Below, piece after piece: positions 28,960 through 37,967 of a stretch of 64,000 nt of DNA. Position 1 is the stretch's first letter; each line of letters opens with the position of its first letter. Under the pieces are notes generated by a model, which was given only the letters and a program-made list of their open reading frames with translations, was not told the origin of the DNA and did no database searches. The DNA lies in IMG/VR virus record IMGVR_UViG_3300038424_000251, positions 62,001 through 126,000 of that record, one strand, 5' to 3'. A program made the position numbers and the translations under genes.

Positions 28960-28987
28960 TTGACTTTTCCTTAAAACGTGATATAAT
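28960..28987 (+). promoter_or_regulatory. sigma70-like promoter TTGACT-16-TATAAT (TG-extended) for the polymerase operon
   Basis: Motif match, 9 nt before the ATG at 28997. Confidence 0.7.
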
Positions 28988-29299: not shown

Positions 29300-29588
29300 A
29301 TTCGTAGAATTTGTTTGGCAGTTTCCTGCCAGAGAAGATTTACAAGAACAAGTAATCTTACAAGTTTATAAAAATGGTACCCTATATATCGAAGGCGGTA
29401 TTATCAATGCTGATGGAAATTATACATCAGAACATGCGGAGAGTGATTATGCCGTTTCTGAAATTACTGTAGATTGGCTTAAAAGTACTCAATTTAATTC
29501 ACTCATCAACTATATCAAGAAATTTTTCTCTCTTGAAAAAGAACTTGCCGAATTGGTTGAAGAAACTGTAAAATATTTAAAAGAATAA
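29250..29588 (+). CDS. hypothetical protein
   Basis: 112 aa ORF; TAATG coupling to the polymerase. Confidence 0.65.
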   Translation: MNVPQIQHLHSQNFNSEFVEFVWQFPAREDLQEQVILQVYKNGTLYIEGGIINADGNYTSEHAESDYAVSEITVDWLKSTQFNSLINYIKKFFSLEKELAELVEETVKYLKE

Positions 29589-32185
29589 TGTATCAAAATA
29601 TATACATCAACAGGAAAGATTGGATTGTTCATCTTTGGGATGATATTAAAGGTTATTCATCATTCCCGTATCCAAAATACGCTTATAAAAGACAAGTAGG
29701 TGGACCTGAAAAGTCAATATATGGTGATGAATTAGTAAAAGTATTTGATTATAAAGACAATGACACAGAGTTATTTGAGTCAGATGTTCCAGCAGAAACA
29801 AGAGTTCTTATGGATACTTACTCCGATTCAGATGAACCATCAATAGGTCATAGGGTGGGTGTAATTGATATTGAAGTATCAACAGAGGGTGGATTTCCAA
29901 ATATAGAAACTGCTGATAAAAAGATTACTGCTATTTCATTGTTTGATTATTTAACTAAAACTTGTTGTATATTTGTTCTTGATAAAGACCATAAAATTGA
30001 CAATAAAGAAGAGGAAGTTGACCCGTGGTTGCCAAAAGATTGGAAAATTACAACAGAAGAAATACAAAAAATAAAAATTGTTGTACGGTCATATGACGAT
30101 GAAGACAATCTTTTAATAGATTTCGTGGATAAATGGCAAGAATGTGCATTTACCATTGTTACAGGTTGGAATGTAGATTATTTTGACCTCCCTTATTTGT
30201 ATCTCCGATTAAAAAATTGTCTTGGTATAAAAGCAGCTAAATGTTTATCGCCCACTGGTGCAGCATATGTAAATGGTTTTACCAAAAAACTAACGCTTGG
30301 TGGTATATCGGTTCTTGATTATATCCTACTATATAAGAAGTTTTCTGGAAAGATGGAACCAACTTATGCTTTAGGTCCTATTGGTTTAAAAACTGTTGGT
30401 ATCGGTAAAATTCAATATCACGGTAATTTAGACGATTTATACAAATCAGATATAAACAAATTTTTAGAATATAACATGACCGATGTTAAAATTATTGTTG
30501 CATTGGATAAAAAACTTAAATTTATTGATTTAGCTAGAAATATTTGTCATGTAGGCCACGTTCCATATGATAATTTTCATATGTCATCACGATATCTTGA
30601 TGGAGCTACATTGATTTATTTGAAACGAAATGGCGGTCTTATTTCTCCAAATAAACCAGCAGAGGGAAAAGAAGAATATACTGAAAGGTTGGAAGAAGGA
30701 GAAGAAGGATTTTCTGGTGCATTTGTCAAGGAGCCCGTGCCGGGAAGATATAATTGGGTTTTTGACCTTGATTTAACTTCAATGTATCCCAATATTATTA
30801 TTTCCCTGAATATATCTCCAGAAACGAAAGTAGGTAAAATAGAAAATTATTCACTCGAAAAGCGTATAAAAGGAGAGACTACAATGTATGAAATTGGTCA
30901 AACAAATTATACACCTGATGAGTTTGAAGAGTTGGTTGAAAAATCAAATTATTCTATTAGTTCTAACGGTATATTATATCGTACAGATAAAGCCGGTGTA
31001 ATTCCTACTCTTTTGTCGTTATGGTTTCAACAGCGCAAGAATATGAGGAAAAAAGCTGCTGAATTCAAAAAAGCTGGTGATATGGAACAATATAATTTCT
31101 ACAACCAACGTCAAGCGGTTTGGAAAATTTTACTCAATTCATTTTACGGAGTATTAGGGTTGCCTTTATTCCGATTTTATGATGTGGATAATGCTGAAGC
31201 AGTAACTACTACAGGTGTAGATATTATTCAAACTACTGCCAAGGCAATTAACATCTATTACAAACAAGCATTGGAAACTGATGAAGATGGTGATTGGGTT
31301 ATTTATAGTGATACCGATTCGTGTTTTGTTGATTCAATTCCCATTATTAAAAAGAGATTTCCAGATATAGATTTGAATAATGAAGATGAAATGACTAAAG
31401 CCATTATGAGCGTGACTACGGAAGTTCAGAGTTATGTGAATCAATTTTATCATGTGATGGCTAAAAAATTCTTCAATTTAAATAAACACACATTTGATGC
31501 TAAGCAGGAAGTAATTAGTAAATCATCGTTTTGGCTTGCTAAGAAACGATATGCGCAATGGATTATTCATGAAGAAGGTGCCTTATTAAAACAACCAAGA
31601 TTGGAAGTAAAAGGTATCGACGTTGTCCGAACATCATTTCCAGCTTCATTTCGGACATTTATGGATTCTTTCTTGAGAAAATTATTGACTGCAGCTCCAA
31701 AAAAGGAACTTGATGATATGATTCTCAAATTCAGAGAAGATATAAAAACACTTGATGTTCTTGATATTGCAAAAAATACTTCTGTAAAATTTGTAAGTCA
31801 GGACGGTGTTCATAACTATAATCCAGATAATAGAAGGCCTCTTCAATTTGTCAAAGGAACGCCGGCACAAGTAAAAGCATGCTTAGCTTACAATGATTTG
31901 TTAATTAAAATGAAGTTAGAAAAACAATTTGAACCAATTCATCATGGTCAGAAAATCAAATGGGTATATTTACAAGATAATCAATATAACTTAGATGCTT
32001 TAGCTTTAAAAGGTGATGGAAATGACCCCGATGAAATATTGGAAATAGTTAATCGGTTAGTTGATAGGAAGAAAATGTTCGAACAGGAATTAAAGAGTAA
32101 ACTAATAGATTTTTACAATGTATTTAAGTGGACATTTCCAAATTCGTCAATGGAAACTGCAAGCCAATTTTTTGATTTTTCTTAA
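29588..32185 (+). CDS. family B DNA polymerase (T4 gp43-like)
   Basis: ExoI DIEV, ExoII GWNVDYFD, ExoIII YNMTD; DLTSMYP, KILLNSFYG, YSDTDS, KKRY. Confidence 0.97.
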   Translation: MYQNIYINRKDWIVHLWDDIKGYSSFPYPKYAYKRQVGGPEKSIYGDELVKVFDYKDNDTELFESDVPAETRVLMDTYSDSDEPSIGHRVGVIDIEVSTEGGFPNIETADKKITAISLFDYLTKTCCIFVLDKDHKIDNKEEEVDPWLPKDWKITTEEIQKIKIVVRSYDDEDNLLIDFVDKWQECAFTIVTGWNVDYFDLPYLYLRLKNCLGIKAAKCLSPTGAAYVNGFTKKLTLGGISVLDYILLYKKFSGKMEPTYALGPIGLKTVGIGKIQYHGNLDDLYKSDINKFLEYNMTDVKIIVALDKKLKFIDLARNICHVGHVPYDNFHMSSRYLDGATLIYLKRNGGLISPNKPAEGKEEYTERLEEGEEGFSGAFVKEPVPGRYNWVFDLDLTSMYPNIIISLNISPETKVGKIENYSLEKRIKGETTMYEIGQTNYTPDEFEELVEKSNYSISSNGILYRTDKAGVIPTLLSLWFQQRKNMRKKAAEFKKAGDMEQYNFYNQRQAVWKILLNSFYGVLGLPLFRFYDVDNAEAVTTTGVDIIQTTAKAINIYYKQALETDEDGDWVIYSDTDSCFVDSIPIIKKRFPDIDLNNEDEMTKAIMSVTTEVQSYVNQFYHVMAKKFFNLNKHTFDAKQEVISKSSFWLAKKRYAQWIIHEEGALLKQPRLEVKGIDVVRTSFPASFRTFMDSFLRKLLTAAPKKELDDMILKFREDIKTLDVLDIAKNTSVKFVSQDGVHNYNPDNRRPLQFVKGTPAQVKACLAYNDLLIKMKLEKQFEPIHHGQKIKWVYLQDNQYNLDALALKGDGNDPDEILEIVNRLVDRKKMFEQELKSKLIDFYNVFKWTFPNSSMETASQFFDFS

Positions 32186-32224: not shown

Positions 32225-32253
32225 TTGACGTAACTTTGAAAAGAAGTTACAAT
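32225..32253 (+). promoter_or_regulatory. sigma70-like promoter TTGACG-17-TACAAT with overlapping inverted repeat GTAACTT-N7-AAGTTAC
   Basis: Direct sequence; precedes the R-M pair. Confidence 0.7.
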
Positions 32254-32289: not shown

Positions 32290-33012
32290 ATGAATTATCC
32301 AACTGAAAAAGAACTCAAAGACTTACTAGAATCAGACCTAGAACTTAATGCTATTGCTCAATCAGGCCCTTCTCTTGAAAAGGGACATCATGTTGCTCCA
32401 GAGGTTGAAAGAATTGTCCGTGAAAAATTGTATAATGCTTATGGGGGCAAATATGAAGAATTTATTGACATATATAAAATAGGTCCCAATAAAGGCCAAC
32501 CAAAACCTAAGAAGCAAGGAAAGGGAGTTAGAAAGGAACCAGATTACAAACTAAAAGATTTTCCTGACCAACCGGGTAATGTAAAAGCAGCATGTGTGTC
32601 TGAAAAAGATGGTGGACCTAATCTTTCATCTCTCTCTAAATACGCTACCCAATATATCGATGGTCAAATAAAAGCTTATTGGTTTCTTATTGTCAATTTA
32701 ATAGATGGTAAAGTTTCTGTCAACTTTCATGAATTGTTTAGTGAACTTCTTCCAGTTTGCCGATTTGATTTTGGTCATGGACAATTAATGCTTGATAAAA
32801 GTAGATATTACAAATGGTTAAAAGAACCAAATCATACAAAACTTTCGCCAACAGAATCTATTGATTATTTATTGGAACTTATATCCAAACCAAAAAGAGA
32901 AAAATTTTACGAAAAAAGAGAAAAGAAATATTCCAAACTTGAAGAGAATTTACTTAAGAAAAAATTGGCGTTGAAACCTTCTTATGAGAACACGGAAGCA
33001 CCAAAGGAATAA
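32290..33012 (+). CDS. putative type II restriction endonuclease
   Basis: EPDY…GNVK PD-(D/E)XK-like pattern; overlaps the MTase gene. Confidence 0.55.
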   Translation: MNYPTEKELKDLLESDLELNAIAQSGPSLEKGHHVAPEVERIVREKLYNAYGGKYEEFIDIYKIGPNKGQPKPKKQGKGVRKEPDYKLKDFPDQPGNVKAACVSEKDGGPNLSSLSKYATQYIDGQIKAYWFLIVNLIDGKVSVNFHELFSELLPVCRFDFGHGQLMLDKSRYYKWLKEPNHTKLSPTESIDYLLELISKPKREKFYEKREKKYSKLEENLLKKKLALKPSYENTEAPKE

Positions 33013-34594
33013 TAAACGTCAAATGGGTCAATTTATGACCCCCAGATTATTGGCACAGAAAGTAATAGGAAATGACATTAAGAAAGAAGAGAATATTTTA
33101 GAGCCATCTTTCGGTGATGGCTCTTTTATTATAGAGATAGCAAAAAAATTGATGCCCATATATGACTATAATCTGGATAATGTATTTGACCACATATACG
33201 GCATAGAATTAGACCCAATTCTTTATAACAAGTGTTTACTGAATATAAAAAAAGAATTTGGTAAAATACCTGAAAAACACCATCTTATTAATGAGGATTT
33301 TTTACTGCATAATTTTGATGGAATATTTTTCAAACATATTTTGGGAAATCCACCGTTTGGGGGAACTATACCAATTAAATATCAAAATAAATTAGAAGAA
33401 TTATATGGTAAAAGATATGGAAAAACTATAAAAAGAGAAAGTTATTCATATTTTTTAGTAAAAAGTGTAGGAATGTTGGAAGTAGAAGGAAAATTATCAT
33501 TTATATGTAGTGATACTTTTCTTACAATAAAAACCATGTGCGGATTACGGAATTTTTTAATGCAAGAAGGACTTGTGTCAATCAAAGAATTGCCTGAATT
33601 TTCAGAGGAAACCAATTATGGCATGGTAATTATTGATTTCATAAAATCAAATAAAAAAGAATCTAACTATATTGAAGTCTTTGGACAAAAAATCTTCAAA
33701 AAGGATATGGAAAAAATAGGGAATTTGTCTTGGGGAAATGTTAATGAATACATGAAATATTTTATAGGCCCTCATTTATCAACTTATATTATTTGTAGTA
33801 GTGGGATGACTATAGGAAAAAATGAATATTTTGTCAGAGAAATAGTTGATGATAAAATAATAGAGCCATACAACTTTACATTTTATAATAAACCGATTAC
33901 ATTAAAAGATGAATTGAATAGAGCACATTTTAATAAGTTATCAGAATCACAAAAAGTAAAAATCACACACAAAGAACAAATGGGAGAAACAAAAAAAGAT
34001 GTCAAAATTGAACCTTTAACAGTACCTGAATCAATAATGATTCCAAATGATTACTATAAATATTATAATAAAATGGTCCCCGGTGATGTATATGTAGAAC
34101 CAAAATATGTAATTTATTGGAGAAATGATGGTGAAGCGGTTAAAATGTTTAAAAAAAATGGAAATTGGTATCTTCATGGTATAGGGGGATTGCCCTTCTT
34201 TGGAAGAGAAGGAATTACATGGAATCTAATAGGTTCTAAAATCAACCCAAGATATTTGCCAAAAGGTTATATTTTGGATAGTGGGTGCCCATGTGGATTT
34301 CTGAAAAATGGTGTTGAAAAAGACGAATTATTCTTTATTATGGGGTGGCTTTTAACTTCCATGGCAAATGATATTCTCAAAAATGTTATAAATCATACCA
34401 GAAATATTCAGGGAAAAGATGTTGAAAAACTTCCATATCCTATATGGGTTTCAGATTCTACAAAACATAAAATAATAGATTATGTTAAGTCGATTATTGA
34501 TTTAAAGAAAAATGGAACTCCGTTGGAAAATAGTTATGTTGAAGTTCTAACAGAGTTATTTGATTTTCAGATTGAAAAAAGTGGTGTTGACTAA
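32984..34594 (+). CDS. amino (N6-adenine-type) DNA methyltransferase, gamma class (TaqI/Eco57I-like)
   Basis: GQFMTP, LEPSFGDGSF, YGIELD, GNPPF, C-terminal TRD. Confidence 0.9.
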   Translation: MRTRKHQRNNKRQMGQFMTPRLLAQKVIGNDIKKEENILEPSFGDGSFIIEIAKKLMPIYDYNLDNVFDHIYGIELDPILYNKCLLNIKKEFGKIPEKHHLINEDFLLHNFDGIFFKHILGNPPFGGTIPIKYQNKLEELYGKRYGKTIKRESYSYFLVKSVGMLEVEGKLSFICSDTFLTIKTMCGLRNFLMQEGLVSIKELPEFSEETNYGMVIIDFIKSNKKESNYIEVFGQKIFKKDMEKIGNLSWGNVNEYMKYFIGPHLSTYIICSSGMTIGKNEYFVREIVDDKIIEPYNFTFYNKPITLKDELNRAHFNKLSESQKVKITHKEQMGETKKDVKIEPLTVPESIMIPNDYYKYYNKMVPGDVYVEPKYVIYWRNDGEAVKMFKKNGNWYLHGIGGLPFFGREGITWNLIGSKINPRYLPKGYILDSGCPCGFLKNGVEKDELFFIMGWLLTSMANDILKNVINHTRNIQGKDVEKLPYPIWVSDSTKHKIIDYVKSIIDLKKNGTPLENSYVEVLTELFDFQIEKSGVD

Positions 34595-34615
34595 ATACAT
34601 TATTTGTGATATAAT
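34587..34615 (+). promoter_or_regulatory. strong sigma70-like promoter TTGACT-17-TATAAT (TG-extended), 8 nt before the ATG at 34624
   Basis: Near-consensus motif. Confidence 0.8.
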
Positions 34616-34623
34616 GTACTATT

Positions 34624-34812
34624 ATGAATATGACACCTTTAATCAATCGACAAGCGATTAAACGAATGGCTCTTAAATTGAGTAAATCAATCAGAGCAGG
34701 TAGATTTACTAGAGTTGGTAGTGAATTTTTTATTCGCGTGAATTCACGGTTGGATGCAATTATTCGTGAAGAAGTTCACAAACATCCAAGCATTGGAAAG
34801 ACATTGAAATGA
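34624..34812 (+). CDS. small basic protein with histone-fold-like pattern
   Basis: LINRQAIKRMA (a1) … RVGSEF (L1) … long a2 … GKTL (L2); 62 aa. Confidence 0.55.
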   Translation: MNMTPLINRQAIKRMALKLSKSIRAGRFTRVGSEFFIRVNSRLDAIIREEVHKHPSIGKTLK

Positions 34813-35150
34813 AAAAACATGGGAAAACATATAAGCCTGTAGGTAGGTTAAAAATTCCTACAACGATTCCTATCTTGATTTCAGGAGTAGGTATGATTAA
34901 TACAAATAAAAATATGAAAATAACAATTGAATGTGAAATGAAAGATAAGTGGGTTCCTCATTTTTTGGGAATGCTTTATCATATGGAAAAATTGGGTAAA
35001 CTGGGAAGTTCAAGAAGAATATCAATATATGCAGATGGTGATGGCGATTTTAGACCAAGATTTAAGTGTATTCAATCAAGTGAACCACTTCCTTTGCCTG
35101 CTAAACCTGTTGAGGAAATTGATGGCAATACGATATTTGATGCTGGTTAA
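34809..35150 (+). CDS. hypothetical protein (YADGDGDFRP motif)
   Basis: ORF in operon; the true start may be downstream (MKITIEC). Confidence 0.6.
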   Translation: MKKHGKTYKPVGRLKIPTTIPILISGVGMINTNKNMKITIECEMKDKWVPHFLGMLYHMEKLGKLGSSRRISIYADGDGDFRPRFKCIQSSEPLPLPAKPVEEIDGNTIFDAG

Positions 35151-35152
35151 TT

Positions 35153-35638
35153 ATGTCAGATAAAATTTTCAATTTTGATGACCAATTAAAAATCGGTAAC
35201 AATGGAGAAACCGATTTTATGAGGATTTATGAAAAGCTTGAACCTAAAAAAAGTTTAGATAATTTTCGTATTGACTTTCTTCTTAATAATGGTAAGACTA
35301 TAGAATTAAAGACTGATAATTATGACATGAATAAAACCCCAAATTTTTTCATGGAACAATATACAGTTTCAGGAAATAAAAGTGATTTGGGTGGTCCTTG
35401 GCGTTCAAAAGAACATAACGTTGATTATTTTGTTTATTATTTTATTAAAAATAAAGTATTCTTTTGGTTTGACCCTGTTTCATTGTGTGAATGTTTGGAT
35501 AAGTTCATAAGAGAAAATGAACTCAAACAAATTTCAATACCAAATGTAGATAAGAATGGTGGATGTTATAAAGCGTTGGGATTTAAGATTCCAAGAGATA
35601 GTTTAAAATCTGTTCTTCTTAAAGAACATAAAATATGA
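35153..35638 (+). CDS. PD-(D/E)XK nuclease-like protein
   Basis: GE..F, IDF…TIELKTD…NFFME, GGPW, DYFVYYF. Confidence 0.7.
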   Translation: MSDKIFNFDDQLKIGNNGETDFMRIYEKLEPKKSLDNFRIDFLLNNGKTIELKTDNYDMNKTPNFFMEQYTVSGNKSDLGGPWRSKEHNVDYFVYYFIKNKVFFWFDPVSLCECLDKFIRENELKQISIPNVDKNGGCYKALGFKIPRDSLKSVLLKEHKI

Positions 35639-35868
35639 AAATAAAAAGTAAAAAATTAAGTAAAATTGAAAAAGAAATTGGTAAATGTATGGAAAAGTAT
35701 ATAGGAGAGCCTATAGATGATATCACTTTGTCAAAAATTGAAAAATCAGTCCAAAAATTAATAAATAATTGTTTTCCAAATCAATATAAAGTTATAATGG
35801 ACAGGTCAAATAATTCTCCAAAAAATATAGACAATCAAATTTTAAATATTGACCTAATTTTAAAATGA
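35635..35868 (+). CDS. mini-protein resembling the contractile tail sheath C-terminal domain
   Basis: IGEPIDDIT…YKVIMDRSNNSPKNIDNQILNIDLILK compared with the sheath consensus FEPND..T…V.CDE.NNTP..ID.N.L..DI. Confidence 0.55.
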   Translation: MKIKSKKLSKIEKEIGKCMEKYIGEPIDDITLSKIEKSVQKLINNCFPNQYKVIMDRSNNSPKNIDNQILNIDLILK

Positions 35869-36662
35869 AGTTTGATTACACAATCAAAGAAGTAAATAAA
35901 TTTACCGCAGCTAAATTAGTTCAACAACATCACTATTCCAAGGTAATGCCTAAACTTACCAAGCATTATCTTGGTGTATTTATTGGTGATAAGATGGTTG
36001 GTGTACTAACTCTTGGATGGGGAACGCAACCCCGCCAAACTATCAATAAACTTTTTCCCGGTCTTACAACCAAGGACTATTATGAAATTGGTAAGATGTG
36101 TATGCTTCCTGAAATGCCCAAAAATTCTGAATCACAAATGTTATCTGCAATTATCAAATGGATAAAAATACATTTGCCAGAAAAGCTATTTCTATATACA
36201 TGGGCTGATGGTATTGTTGGTAAAGTTGGTTATGTGTATCAATCAGCAAATTTCTATTATGGTGGTTTCATTTGGACGGATATTTATATTAGCCCTGATG
36301 GGGAGAAAATTCATCCAAGAACCTCACATAATCTTTGTATAGAGAATGCTAAGTTTTGTAATAAAGAAAAGATATTCTGGTTGACCCGAGATTTTATGAA
36401 ATTGAAAGGAATCACTAGAATAAGAGGAAAACAATTCAGATATATTATGCCTTTATCTAAAATGGCTAGAAAAATGCTTGACAAATCTACTGTTAGATGG
36501 ACAATAGATTATCCTAAAGAAGAAGATTTAGAATGGAAAAAACAAATTGATGGTGGTTATGAACTAATTAAAGAATTGCCAAAAATTGATTTGGGAATGG
36601 TCAATATAAATAAAAAGAATGTCAATTCTTATAAAAGGGAAGAAAATCAATTTTTTGGATAA
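35865..36662 (+). CDS. Mom-like (GNAT fold) DNA modification protein
   Basis: HHYS, VGVLTLG, EIGKMC…PKNSESQMLS, TWAD….GYVYQSANFYYGG. Confidence 0.8.
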   Translation: MKFDYTIKEVNKFTAAKLVQQHHYSKVMPKLTKHYLGVFIGDKMVGVLTLGWGTQPRQTINKLFPGLTTKDYYEIGKMCMLPEMPKNSESQMLSAIIKWIKIHLPEKLFLYTWADGIVGKVGYVYQSANFYYGGFIWTDIYISPDGEKIHPRTSHNLCIENAKFCNKEKIFWLTRDFMKLKGITRIRGKQFRYIMPLSKMARKMLDKSTVRWTIDYPKEEDLEWKKQIDGGYELIKELPKIDLGMVNINKKNVNSYKREENQFFG

Positions 36663-36673
36663 TAAAAGGAAAT

Positions 36674-36991
36674 ATGCATTATAAAGATGGAACAGAAGCA
36701 ATGGTTGGAGATATAGCTCGTGGTAAAGGATTTAATATTCCTTATGAAATTGTAGCTCCAGTGACAAAATTAAAACCTGAAGGTGGTAAATGCAATCTTG
36801 AACTTAAAGTTGTTAAAGCTACACTGATACCGGGATACAATGATGGTGATGGTGGAATCGGATGGATTCCCGAACAATGGACTTTTGATATGATTGACGA
36901 ATATGGTGACGTTTCTGAATTTGAATTGATTTACCGAAAAGGTTGGAAGAGAGTTCAATCCCGTAATCTTGTTTGGGAAAAAAGCTGTTAA
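36674..36991 (+). CDS. hypothetical protein (MHYKDG.EA.VGD motif)
   Basis: SD-like AAGGA upstream; 105 aa ORF. Confidence 0.65.
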   Translation: MHYKDGTEAMVGDIARGKGFNIPYEIVAPVTKLKPEGGKCNLELKVVKATLIPGYNDGDGGIGWIPEQWTFDMIDEYGDVSEFELIYRKGWKRVQSRNLVWEKSC

Positions 36992-37002
36992 TTATAGTTT
37001 TA

Positions 37003-37548
37003 ATGAGTGAAAAATTTACAATAGGTTATAAATCCATTTTTGATACACCTGCTGATGCTTATGTCAATACCATTAACTGTGTGGGTATAATGGGCGCTGG
37101 TATTGCTTTGGAGTTTAAGAAACGTTATCCTTTGATGTTTGAACATTATAAAGAACTATGCTCTAAACATGCAATTCGTCCCGGTGATTGTTACACTTAT
37201 TTTGACCACGAACATCAGATTTATCTTCTTGGATTAGCAGTAAAAAATGATTGGCATTATTGGAGTACTCTTGAATGGATTGAATCATCAATTAAATCGT
37301 TAAAACTTGCTATATTGGAGAATGACATTAAATCAGTAAATATGCCTTTACTCGGAGGAAAGAATGGAAGAAGAGGCCCATATGGAAAAGTGGAGGGATT
37401 TACACCGCCGCCAGACAGAATTGAATTGAAAAAATTGATTGAAGAAGAACTTAAACCATTCGCTGAAAAATTTCAGATAATTATCAATTTGTGTTTACCT
37501 GATGAACAACCAAAAAAACAAGAAGTTACATTGGATTCATTTATATGA
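37003..37548 (+). CDS. macro domain ADP-ribose hydrolase (DarG/Poa1p-like)
   Basis: VNTINCVGIMGAGIALEFKKRYP, K..W…S.LEWI, MPLLG. Confidence 0.85.
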   Translation: MSEKFTIGYKSIFDTPADAYVNTINCVGIMGAGIALEFKKRYPLMFEHYKELCSKHAIRPGDCYTYFDHEHQIYLLGLAVKNDWHYWSTLEWIESSIKSLKLAILENDIKSVNMPLLGGKNGRRGPYGKVEGFTPPPDRIELKKLIEEELKPFAEKFQIIINLCLPDEQPKKQEVTLDSFI

Positions 37549-37967
37549 ACAGAGAAATAAAATTTAGAGTTTGGGATGATGTTGAAAAGAAAATGCTTTA
37601 TCCAAAGGATATTTTTAATGAACAGAGTATTTTTTATGAAGATGATGAAAATGGTAATCTTTTGATAAATAGAGTTATTGATAGTTATGGTGTAAGGCGA
37701 AGTCTGGCCATCCAACAATATACCGGTCTTAAAGATAAACATAGCAAAGAAATTTATGAAGGAGATATCATAGAAACTATATACCAATCCAAAGGTTCAA
37801 TAATTTACTTAAACGAATTTGGTGGATTTAGAATTATAGTCAATGAAATATGTCTTCCTATTGTGACGGTTAGATTTATTGATGAAAAACCAAATGGATT
37901 ATTATTAGTTGTTGATAAAATAATAGGTAACATTTTTGAAACACCAGAATTACTAAATAAAATATAA
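37545..37967 (+). CDS. YopX family protein
   Basis: REIKFRVWD…QYTGLKDK..KEIYEGDI…IGNIFETPELL. Confidence 0.9.
   Translation: MNREIKFRVWDDVEKKMLYPKDIFNEQSIFYEDDENGNLLINRVIDSYGVRRSLAIQQYTGLKDKHSKEIYEGDIIETIYQSKGSIIYLNEFGGFRIIVNEICLPIVTVRFIDEKPNGLLLVVDKIIGNIFETPELLNKI

What the first reader, a model, noticed from the sequence alone, without database searches (positions are those of the whole stretch)
35635..35868. Stand-alone tail-sheath C-terminal domain in an early/replication operon
Seen: 77 aa carrying the GEP.D..T and V..D..NN.P..ID…L.ID motifs of contractile sheath C-termini, far from any tail genes and between a nuclease and a Mom-like gene. Inference: a decoy for defence sensors that detect tail proteins, a dominant-negative inhibitor of competitor phage or contractile-system sheath assembly, or an assembly regulator.
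Basis: partly seen in the sequence, partly recalled or inferred. Interest (0 to 1): 0.6.

Follow-up and report, generated by a model that had tools for sequence, protein, structure and literature searches.

The report
Armless mini copy of tail-sheath core
A 77-residue gene in the replication and DNA-modification operon of a 365-kb phage is a real, stand-alone copy of the small inner module that links tail-sheath subunits together, and it belongs to an undescribed family of such mini-proteins whose function is unknown but probably involves holding the connecting arms of sheath subunits.

Summary
The ORF at 35635..35868 (+) exists and its start and stop overlap both neighbours as ATGA. It is homologous to the C-terminal core of contractile sheaths.

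- **Homology:** two PHROG sheath families match at E about 4e-5. A profile built only from genuine sheath C-termini scores it 31.3 bits, against 8.3 for the best of 2000 shuffles.
- **Fold:** the AlphaFold model (pLDDT 79) superposes on T4 gp18 at 1.8 Å over 74 residues.
- **What is kept and lost:** it keeps two helices and the two-stranded hairpin that accepts the arms of neighbouring sheath subunits. It has no arms of its own and no sheath body.
- **Not a recent copy:** the phage's own 1065-aa sheath lies 75 kb away, and BLASTP finds no similarity to it.
- **Accessory gene:** the closest relatives lack the gene exactly.
- **Family:** about 45-50 clusters of similar 57-140-aa phage proteins exist in metagenomes, mostly in early or small-ORF regions. 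One subgroup has dN/dS of 0.27-0.46.
- **Predicted binding:** a complex model puts the own sheath's C-terminal arm on the mini-protein's last strand (0.68 against 0.00 for controls).

Best reading: an arm-accepting, non-propagating mimic that modulates or inhibits sheath polymerisation. The biological role (brake on its own sheath, inhibitor of competitors, or decoy) is untested. I found no prior description.

The parts
35635..35868 (+). Gene for the 77-aa stand-alone sheath C-terminal ('handshake') module (P0001).
   Evidence: ORF and translation. PHROG sheath hits. Custom sheath profile 31.3 bits against 8.3 for shuffles. Fold match to T4 gp18.
35650..35694 (+). Helix 1 (residues 6-20). It aligns to the helix that follows the 'RINV.RL' stretch of sheath C-termini.
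   Evidence: AF2 model with alignment, pLDDT 79. Profile alignment of residues 6-77 to sheath profile positions 27-102.
35704..35727 (+). GEPIDDIT, the counterpart of the sheath 'FEPND..TR' turn between the two helices. In the complex model it touches the sheath.
   Evidence: Interface residues 19-28.
35719..35772 (+). Helix 2 (residues 29-46).
35785..35862 (+). Two-stranded beta-hairpin (strands 51-54 and 73-76) with the conserved loop V..D..NN.P..ID. In sheaths this is the sheet that accepts the arms of other subunits. The protein ends one residue after it.
   Evidence: Invariant columns V53, D56, N59, N60, P62, D66. Model. Role of the sheet in sheaths (PMC13433997). Residues 65-77 contact the sheath C-terminal arm in the model.
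35635..35638 (+). ATGA overlap. The start of P0001 overlaps the stop of the upstream 161-aa gene.
   Evidence: Sequence.
35865..35868 (+). ATGA overlap. The start of Mom overlaps the stop of P0001.
   Evidence: Sequence.
35153..35638 (+). Upstream neighbour, 161 aa, probably a PD-(D/E)XK-fold protein. In the relative L100 it overlaps Mom directly, with no gene between them.
35865..36662 (+). Downstream neighbour: a Mom-family DNA-modification enzyme.
   Evidence: Pfam Mom 3.5e-54, phrog_1384 1.7e-38.
34587..34615 (+). Sigma-70-like promoter (TTGACT, 17 nt, TATAAT, with TG). It lies in the only intergenic gap upstream of the tightly packed run 62aa-113aa-161aa-P0001-Mom-105aa-Macro-YopX.
   Evidence: Consensus scan, 11 of 12 matches. 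Gap sequence. This is a match to a consensus only, not shown to be active.

Best explanation
P0001 is an expressed, horizontally acquired accessory gene. Its product is the isolated 'handshake' module of a contractile sheath.

**What the module is.** It consists of two helices packed on a two-stranded beta-sheet. In a sheath this sheet is extended by the N- and C-terminal arms of subunits from the next disc, and that contact knits the sheath together. P0001 has the acceptor sheet but no arms and no outer domains.

**Proposed mechanism.** It binds a terminal arm of an unassembled sheath subunit by beta-strand addition, above all the C-terminal arm. Because it cannot pass an arm on, it acts as a dead end.

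**Proposed role.** It would be a competitive brake on sheath polymerisation. I commit to that role. It is made from a host-type promoter together with replication and DNA-modification genes. Its target would be either untemplated polymerisation of the phage's own sheath or the sheaths of co-resident contractile machines (co-infecting myophages, tailocins).

**Shown and inferred.**
- Shown: homology, fold, architecture, accessory status, and the existence of a family under purifying selection.
- Modelled only: binding of the sheath arm.
- Inferred: the effect on assembly, the target and the timing of expression.
For: **Homology and fold**
- PHROG sheath hits.
- Sheath-only profile 31.3 bits against 8.3 for shuffles.
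- Family profile hits T4 gp18 residues 558-653 at E 7.8e-14.
- AF2 pLDDT 79. Foldseek finds T4 gp18 at TM 0.79 and rmsd 1.8 Å over 74 residues, and 25 of the 26 best rows shown are sheaths.
- VIA-align gives sheaths Z 7.2-8.8. It also finds gp25-type sheath initiators at Z 5-7.1, which are the known stand-alone arm acceptors.

**Architecture**
- The alignment stops at the end of the hairpin, just before the sheath's C-terminal arm strand.
- The two-stranded sheet accepts the N- and C-termini of the next disc (PMC13433997).

**Complex model**
- Own sheath residues 1-145 plus 740-1065 plus P0001 gave ipSAE 0.68, 0.67 and 0.68. The best of three controls was 0.00.
- The mark was reached by 51 of 78 solved complexes and 2 of 108 mismatched pairs.
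- The three runs share at least 97% of contacts, and the partner's pLDDT is at least 79.
- The interface is sheath residues 1043-1059 (the C-terminal arm) against P0001 residues 65-77 and 19-28.

**A real gene**
- ATGA overlaps on both sides.
- It is a precise one-gene difference from the relative L100.
- About 45-50 clusters of the same helix-helix-hairpin design exist.
- dN/dS is 0.27-0.46 in one subgroup.

**Early or accessory setting, recurring**
- Next to PolB, a methyltransferase, Mom, the clamp loader.
- Relatives sit after DnaB, after RNA polymerase and a PIF1 helicase, beside a DNA methylase, or in arrays of tiny ORFs.
Against: - No experiment exists. No member of the family has been studied.
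- The complex pass may be memory of solved sheath-sheath contacts. The job also differed from the tool's calibration (three chains).
- A free acceptor sequesters monomers one to one. It would therefore need high expression to matter, unlike a true chain-end cap.
- If it binds the phage's own sheath, early expression could harm the phage.
- Its closest relatives do without it, so it is not needed for tail assembly.
- P0001 departs from the family motif (ICDETNNTPE in the family, IMDRSNNSPK here) and fails Pfam's sheath_1C threshold.
- Some relatives carry features that do not fit a cytoplasmic sheath partner, such as the Tat-like signal in L102.
- Expression timing is inferred from a consensus promoter only.
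Confidence: 0.35

Rival explanations
1. Exapted scaffold with another partner. The helix-helix-hairpin is a general beta-augmentation module, and the small family now binds something other than sheath. Candidates are the tail tube, a host protein or a DNA-metabolism factor. The sheath ancestry would then be history only.
For: - Structural neighbours also include POTRA domains at Z 5-6.9, which bind many partners by strand addition.
- The hairpin is fused to unrelated parts. Examples are an HTH_37 domain in Pseudomonas phage Lu11, long unrelated tails in P0082, P0100, P0023 and P0125, and a Tat-like signal in L102.
- The recurring neighbours are DNA or RNA enzymes, not tail genes.
- The sheath core also contacts the tube (PMC9230969).
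Against: - The loop motif is kept almost letter for letter as in T4-type sheaths. This is easiest to explain if the original contact is kept.
- The only partner tested in silico, the sheath arm, passed.
Confidence: 0.22
2. Neutral passenger or relic. It would be a fragment-derived ORF that rides in a hypervariable region, is translated because it sits in an operon, and does nothing useful.
For: - It is absent from the nearest relatives.
- All copies found are 100% identical, so selection on P0001 itself cannot be measured.
- Its GC content (21%) is the lowest in the region.
- It is the most divergent member of its family.
- One relative (P0038) lies right behind a sheath gene, as a fresh 3' duplicate would.
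Against: - The frame is intact and has its own start.
- Both junctions are translationally coupled.
- All core motif positions are kept, and the fold is predicted with confidence.
- A related subgroup has dN/dS of 0.27-0.46 and constant length across many contigs.
Confidence: 0.13
3. Immune decoy. The protein displays the most conserved sheath epitope early in infection. It would occupy or blunt a host sensor that recognises sheath protein.
For: - The family conserves the ICDETNNTPE loop more strictly than the rest of the module.
- It sits in an early or accessory setting and has a patchy distribution typical of arms-race genes.
- Sensors of conserved phage structural proteins exist, and sheath is named as a possible further target (PMC13581612).
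Against: - No sheath-sensing defence system is known.
- There is no PADLOC hit.
- A faithful epitope mimic could as easily trigger a sensor as block it.
- P0001 itself deviates from the conserved loop.
Confidence: 0.12
4. Minor virion part. It would be a second sheath-initiator-like or sheath-end protein built into the tail, encoded away from other tail genes as is common in jumbo phages.
For: - The fold resembles gp25-type initiators (6u5b_a Z 7.1, 2ia7 Z 6.0). There is a weak phrog_2669 'baseplate protein' hit at E 0.13.
- Tail genes of this genome are scattered: the sheath is at 20 kb and gp25 at 308 kb.
- P0028 lies two genes after a PAAR gene.
Against: - The genome already has a gp25 above Pfam's cut-off.
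- P0001 lacks the LysM-like half by which initiators dock to the wedge.
- Close relatives lack the gene, although their tails should be the same.
- All its neighbours are DNA enzymes.
Confidence: 0.08

Closest known systems
C-terminal domain of contractile tail sheath proteins (Pfam PF17482 Phage_sheath_1C; T4 gp18 residues about 558-653)
   Same: - Same fold and same order of elements: helix, FEPND-like turn, helix, hairpin with the D..NN.P..ID loop.
- Detectable sequence homology.
   Different: - Only 77 aa. The smallest sheaths modelled in a survey of sheath proteins are 321-341 aa (PMC9230969).
- No N-terminal arm, no PF04984 body and no C-terminal arm strand.
- Encoded alone in a replication operon.
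- Below Pfam's threshold.
gp25 / TssE / GPW sheath initiators (Pfam PF04965)
   Same: - Small stand-alone proteins.
- Their two-stranded handshake sheet accepts the N- and C-termini of sheath subunits (PMC13433997).
- Structurally similar at Z 5-7.
   Different: - Initiators carry a LysM-like domain, sit in the baseplate, are encoded with baseplate genes and are essential.
- P0001 has no PF04965 match, descends from the sheath C-terminus rather than from gp25, and is dispensable in relatives.
- The genome has its own gp25.
Undescribed metagenomic family of 57-140-aa phage proteins with the ICDETNNTPE hairpin (for example P0067, P0122, P0093, P0007, P0024)
   Same: - Same helix-helix-hairpin design ending at the hairpin.
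- Same kind of genomic setting.
- P0001 scores 59.5 bits against a profile of nine of them built without it.
   Different: - P0001 is the most divergent member: M for C, RS for ET, S for T and K for E in the loop.
- It has no close relatives other than identical copies.
Com, the small translational activator encoded just upstream of and overlapping mom in phage Mu (from my own knowledge)
   Same: A small gene directly upstream of, and overlapping, a mom gene.
   Different: - Com is a zinc-finger protein. P0001 has only two cysteines, a different fold and no sequence similarity.
- Relatives express Mom without it.
- The resemblance is positional only.

Membership tests
Phage_sheath_1C domain (PF17482) | Match to the Pfam model at or above the gathering score (26.9 bits). 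| tested here: not met
   No hit for P0001 at E up to 1, and none in the genome search with the model. Its relatives P0002, P0004 and P0005 and the L102 protein do pass, at 42, 29.7, 29.1 and 33.6 bits.
Phage_sheath_1C domain (PF17482) | Sequence homology to sheath C-termini by other profiles. | tested here: met
   phrog_23 at 3.1e-5 and phrog_10581 at 4.9e-5. A profile of 12 genuine sheath C-termini gives 31.3 bits against 8.3 for the best of 2000 shuffles. E is 4.4e-8 in a whole-genome six-frame search.
Phage_sheath_1C domain (PF17482) | Fold: two helices packed on the two-stranded handshake sheet. | tested here: met
   Predicted model only. pLDDT 79.2. T4 gp18 at TM 0.79 and rmsd 1.8 Å. Sheaths at Z 7.2-8.8. 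The nearest ESM Atlas shapes all carry PF17482.
Contractile sheath protein (functional sheath subunit) | N-terminal arm, PF04984 core and C-terminal arm strand, with a length of at least about 320 aa. | tested here: not met
   The protein is 77 aa. The alignment covers sheath profile positions 27-102 only and ends before the arm strand. There is no PF04984 hit. Minimal sheaths are 321-341 aa.
gp25 / TssE / GPW sheath initiator (PF04965) | PF04965 match, a LysM-like domain and baseplate gene context. | tested here: not met
   No Pfam hit. There is only structural likeness of the hairpin half. The neighbours are DNA enzymes. The real gp25 is at genome 308 kb.
Stand-alone sheath-hairpin mini-proteins (family defined here) | Own start, 57-140 aa, helix-helix-hairpin with the D..NN.P loop, no sheath body, significant score to the family profile. 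| tested here: met
   59.5 bits against a profile built without P0001. The architecture is shared. The loop is partly diverged.
Stand-alone sheath-hairpin mini-proteins (family defined here) | Binds sheath terminal arms. | tested here: inconclusive
   Model only: ipSAE 0.68 against a best control of 0.00, a mark reached by 51 of 78 solved complexes and 2 of 108 mismatched pairs. The pass may be memory of solved sheath contacts.
Com-like translational activator of mom | Zinc-finger with four cysteines, and a requirement for Mom translation. | tested here: not met
   P0001 has two cysteines only. The relatives L100 and L019 have Mom without this gene.
Known anti-phage defence or counter-defence component | Match to a PADLOC model. 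| tested here: not met
   No hit at E up to 0.1.

The most novel reading that the evidence does not exclude
Many phages carry early-expressed mimics of the sheath's arm-accepting hairpin as weapons or shields. In one version they poison the tail-sheath assembly of co-infecting myophages or host tailocins and T6SS. In the other they mask the most conserved sheath epitope from a not yet discovered host sensor. P0001 would be one such gene. The Tat-signal and HTH-fused variants would show the module being redeployed to other compartments and to regulation.
Probability: 0.2. Interest if true: 0.8.

Novelty: new variant of a known kind. Interest (0 to 1): 0.6.

Why it matters
Sheath subunits of all contractile injection machines (myophage tails, tailocins, eCIS, T6SS) are held together by the same arm-and-hairpin contact. 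A natural, minimal, armless copy of the acceptor half would be a ready-made tool and a natural experiment for controlling that contact. If it brakes or blocks sheath polymerisation, it would be the first phage-encoded regulator or inhibitor of sheath assembly. It would also give a function to a sizeable set of tiny early ORFs that are now all 'hypothetical'. If it does not, the family still shows how a structural gene's 3' end can be spun off and kept as an independent gene. Among 50,697 deposited phage genomes, my tblastn searches with four family members found the module outside a sheath gene only at the N-terminus of one Pseudomonas phage Lu11 protein. It has therefore escaped experimental attention.

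Tried and rejected
**Origin of the gene**
- Recent duplication of the phage's own sheath is rejected. BLASTP of P0001 against the own sheath finds nothing. P0001 is closer to the small family (31-32% identity) than to its own sheath C-terminus (25%).

**Searches that found nothing for P0001**
- Pfam scan.
- phmmer against PDB sequences. The only rows are MecA at E 0.7, taken as chance.
- tblastn against 50,697 phage records.
- PADLOC.
- The word-based homologue search with P0001 alone found only itself.
- IMG/VR holds only identical copies. dN/dS on P0001 itself is therefore impossible, and I used a related subgroup instead.

**Filtering of hits**
- Many 'small' hits of the profile searches are contig-end fragments of real sheaths. 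They give E below 1e-25 to the sheath profile and run through the arm strand. I set them aside.
- P0003 and P0006 are repeat proteins, treated as spurious.

**Co-occurrence with a sheath in complete genomes**
- This could not be tested. IMG/VR scans with P0122 and P0093 returned only full-length sheaths or contig-end pieces of them.
- The L102 record has no sheath but is only 26% complete.
- Contigs from other collections are not held.
- Prokaryote genomes yielded only full-length sheaths.

**Other checks**
- The Com-like role was rejected (see the membership test).
- A search for the T4 late-promoter motif was uninformative.
- There are no Rfam families or tRNAs in the window.
No read evidence for expression was obtained, and read laying was not used.

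Full report
**1. What is there**

The ORF at window 35635..35868 (+) encodes 77 residues. Its ATG overlaps the TGA of the upstream 161-aa gene, and its TGA overlaps the ATG of the downstream gene. Both junctions read ATGA. It therefore sits inside a tightly packed, co-directional run of genes. No ORF of 40 aa or more lies on the opposite strand under it.

The window is positions 62001-126000 of a 365,299-bp IMG/VR virus record. CheckV rates the record complete, and its GC content is 33%. The DNA polymerase is T4-type. The nearest cultured relative is Microcystis phage Mel-JY01 at 44% identity.

**2. Is the sheath likeness real?**

Yes.
- **PHROG profiles.** Two independent PHROG tail-sheath families match the same, C-terminal part of their profiles. 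phrog_23 matches at E 3.1e-5 (positions 378-445 of 496). phrog_10581 matches at E 4.9e-5 (822-894 of 915).
- **Pfam.** Pfam's PF17482 does not reach the protein, so I tested independently.
- **Independent profiles.** A profile built only from 12 genuine sheath C-termini scores P0001 31.3 bits, and the best of 2000 shuffles scores 8.3. A profile of nine small relatives built without P0001 scores it 59.5 bits against 12.0.
- **Genome-wide check.** Among all 5367 six-frame ORFs of the genome, only the sheath gene and this ORF match the sheath profile.
- **Family profile against solved structures.** It hits T4 gp18 residues 558-653 of 659 at E 7.8e-14.
- **Fold.**
  - The AlphaFold2 model made with 12 family sequences has pLDDT 79.2. 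Its elements are helices 6-20 and 29-46 and strands 51-54 and 73-76.
  - Foldseek places it on T4 gp18 at TM 0.79 and rmsd 1.8 Å over 74 residues, and 25 of the 26 best rows shown are contractile sheaths.
  - An aligner that does not depend on Foldseek gives sheaths Z 7.2-8.8.
  - The nearest shapes in the ESM Atlas all carry PF17482.
  - Caveat: the model is a prediction informed by sheath-like sequences.

**3. What part of a sheath it is**

The profile alignment covers P0001 residues 6-77 against sheath profile positions 27-102. That span is helix, FEPND-like turn, helix, and the hairpin with the D..NN.P..ID loop. P0001 ends exactly where sheaths continue into the 'KP..aEFIvLnF' strand, the C-terminal arm. 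It also has no N-terminal arm and none of the PF04984 body.

In sheaths, the two-stranded sheet of this inner domain accepts the N- and C-termini of subunits of the next disc. This is the 'handshake' that links successive discs. Baseplate sheath initiators use the same two-stranded sheet to accept the arms of the first disc (PMC13433997). Consistent with this, gp25-type initiators appear among the structural neighbours: 6u5b_a at Z 7.1, 2ia7 at Z 6.0 and 9f4a_AA at Z 5.2.

A survey of sheath proteins puts the smallest modelled ones at 321-341 aa (PMC9230969). P0001 therefore cannot be a sheath. It is the acceptor half of the handshake alone.

**4. Setting**

The neighbours, in order, are:
- PolB at 29588-32185.
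- A 240-aa protein of unknown function.
- A DNA methyltransferase.
- 62-aa and 113-aa proteins.
- The 161-aa protein. It has a PD-(D/E)XK-like motif seen by eye, and its protein-language-model neighbours lie in that clan.
- P0001.
- Mom (Pfam 3.5e-54).
- A 105-aa protein.
- A Macro-domain protein.
- YopX.
- A 255-aa protein, a 58-aa ORF and then the clamp loader.

The only gap upstream of the run that contains P0001 holds a near-consensus sigma-70 promoter with an extended -10 element, at 34587-34615. Similar promoters stand before the PolB operon and the 240-aa gene. This fits early transcription by the host polymerase but is a consensus match only.

The genome's single sheath gene (1065 aa, genome 19765-22962) lies 75 kb away, and its single gp25 is at 308 kb. 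None of the 20 largest ORFs of the window is a tail gene.

**5. Origin and status**

- **Not a recent copy.** P0001 shows no BLASTP similarity to the phage's own sheath.
- **Identical copies only.** All other copies found are 100% identical and come from the same phage in other samples.
- **Missing from close relatives.**
  - In L100 the 161-aa protein is 76% identical and Mom 86% identical, and the 161-aa gene overlaps Mom directly.
  - In L019 both the 161-aa gene and P0001 are missing.
  - The PolB-to-Mom interval differs in gene content among relatives.
- **Composition.** The gene has the lowest GC content of the region, 21%.

I conclude that it is a precisely inserted, lineage-specific accessory gene.

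**6. A family**

- **First relatives.** An exhaustive phmmer search of 1.84 billion representatives found small relatives of 124-143 aa at E 2.5e-4 to 9e-4. Three of them pass Pfam's PF17482 cut-off.
- **Extent.** Profile searches then gave 166 hits. After removing fragments of real sheaths, about 45-50 clusters remain. They are 57-140 aa long, have their own start and the same helix-helix-hairpin design, and most end at or shortly after the hairpin.
- **Conserved loop.** Their loop reads ICDETNNTPE almost without change, as in T4-type sheaths.
- **Selection.** Four members of one 79-83-aa subgroup give pairwise dN/dS of 0.27-0.46. The genes are short, so the values are noisy.
- **Contexts:**
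  - after a DnaB-type helicase;
  - after an RNA polymerase subunit and a PIF1 helicase;
  - between ribonucleotide reductase and DnaJ genes and a DNA methylase;
  - among NAD-salvage, RtcB and RNA-ligase genes;
  - in long arrays of tiny ORFs;
  - two genes after a PAAR gene;
  - once directly behind an 802-aa sheath gene, which suggests birth by duplication of the 3' end.
- **Variants.** One carries a Tat-like signal (L102). Another fuses the hairpin to an HTH_37 domain, in Pseudomonas phage Lu11.
- **Distribution.**
  - Among 50,697 deposited phage genomes, tblastn with four family members found only that Lu11 protein. One further hit, in Ralstonia phage RsoM2USA, is labelled 'hypothetical protein' and was not checked.
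  - One pattern scan of representative genomes of 185,579 prokaryote species gave only full-length sheaths.
- **Literature.** I found no paper describing such proteins.

**7. How it most likely works**

A module that can accept an arm but has none to give should bind the free arms of unassembled sheath subunits and stop there.

A complex model supports the contact. It used the own sheath's N-terminal 145 residues, its C-terminal 326 residues and P0001.
- **Score.** ipSAE was 0.68, 0.67 and 0.68, and the best of three controls was 0.00.
- **Calibration.** That mark was reached by 51 of 78 solved complexes and 2 of 108 mismatched pairs.
- **Consistency.** The three runs share at least 97% of contacts, and the partner's pLDDT is at least 79.
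- **Interface.** Sheath residues 1043-1059, which form the C-terminal arm strand, lie against the last strand of P0001 (residues 65-77) and the inter-helix turn (residues 19-28).
- **Limits.** The tool warns that a pass for a family with solved complexes may be memory. It shows the likeness, not that this copy binds. This three-chain job also differs from the tool's calibration.

I therefore rate the arm-acceptor mechanism as the best-supported explanation at 0.35.

Its biological purpose is open.
- **Brake on its own sheath.** It could limit untemplated polymerisation of the phage's own sheath. That is physically sensible, because partial sequestration strongly lowers spontaneous nucleation while templated growth on the baseplate can win. 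It is odd, however, for a gene that close relatives lack.
- **Inhibitor of foreign contractile machines.** This fits the early, accessory, patchy pattern. It needs high expression and some selectivity.

The rivals are a different partner (0.22), a neutral relic (0.13), an immune decoy (0.12) and a minor virion part (0.08).

**8. Verdict**

Two of the three are consistent with my modelling. The gene is a new variant of a known kind: a sheath-derived, armless handshake module that stands alone, one member of an undescribed family. Interest is moderate to high. The mechanism is directly testable with simple binding and polysheath assays, and the target contact is shared by all contractile injection systems.

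No read evidence for expression was obtained, and read laying was not used.

Noticed in passing
L102:3936-4373 (IMGVR_UViG_3300020037_002393): A 145-aa stand-alone sheath C-terminal protein (Pfam PF17482, 33.6 bits). Its N-terminus looks like a twin-arginine export signal (NRRTLLGF, a hydrophobic stretch, then VTA). It lies between ribonucleotide reductase and DnaJ genes and a DNA methylase. An exported sheath core domain is hard to explain.
   Followed up: partly
L112:5001-5501 (Pseudomonas phage Lu11, locus tag Lu11_0114): A 166-aa 'hypothetical protein' begins with the sheath hairpin motif (YEVICDETNNTPE...NVDITL) and ends in an HTH_37 DNA-binding domain. Among cultured phages it was the only carrier found with four family members as queries. 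The fusion hints at a regulator that reads out sheath protein.
   Followed up: partly
L110:3492-8029: In a T4-like tail module, a 93-aa sheath-C copy sits directly after the 802-aa sheath gene. A TROVE/Ro60 plus vWA gene follows it, inserted before the tail tube gene. This looks like a 3' duplication linked to a cassette insertion and may show how the small family arises.
   Followed up: no
window 32290-35150, compared with L100 and L019: The interval between PolB and Mom is hypervariable among relatives. The 240-aa gene, the 536-aa methyltransferase and P0001 occur only here. The relatives carry other small cysteine-rich ORFs instead.
   Followed up: partly
window 35153-35638 and 35865-36662: A PD-(D/E)XK-like 161-aa gene and Mom are adjacent, and in L100 they overlap. 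They resemble a split form of the restriction-fold-Mom fusions reported for jumbo phages (PMC7824862). P0001 is inserted between the two halves.
   Followed up: partly
window 28960-28987, 32225-32253, 34587-34615: Three intergenic sigma-70-like promoters, each directly upstream of a co-directional gene run. The first and third have an extended -10 (TG) and match 11 of 12 consensus positions. The second matches 10 of 12 without TG. The total number of promoter-like sites in the region is not above shuffles, but these three sit in the rare gaps.
   Followed up: partly
window 5618-26479: This stretch holds a large block with an aminotransferase, two nucleotide-sugar epimerase-like genes, two glycosyltransferases and many unassigned genes, mostly on the minus strand. 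The block looks like a sugar or polysaccharide modification cluster, which is unusual in size for a phage.
   Followed up: no
window 36973-37967: A Macro-domain protein (Pfam 1.8e-8) and a YopX protein lie directly downstream of Mom in the same run. The Macro domain may point to ADP-ribose-related counter-defence.
   Followed up: no
L012:597-1028 (P0002): This 143-aa relative keeps a sheath-like N-terminal 'PGLY' stretch, the C-terminal module and the arm strand. It looks like a miniature sheath made of both arms and the handshake core without any body.
   Followed up: no
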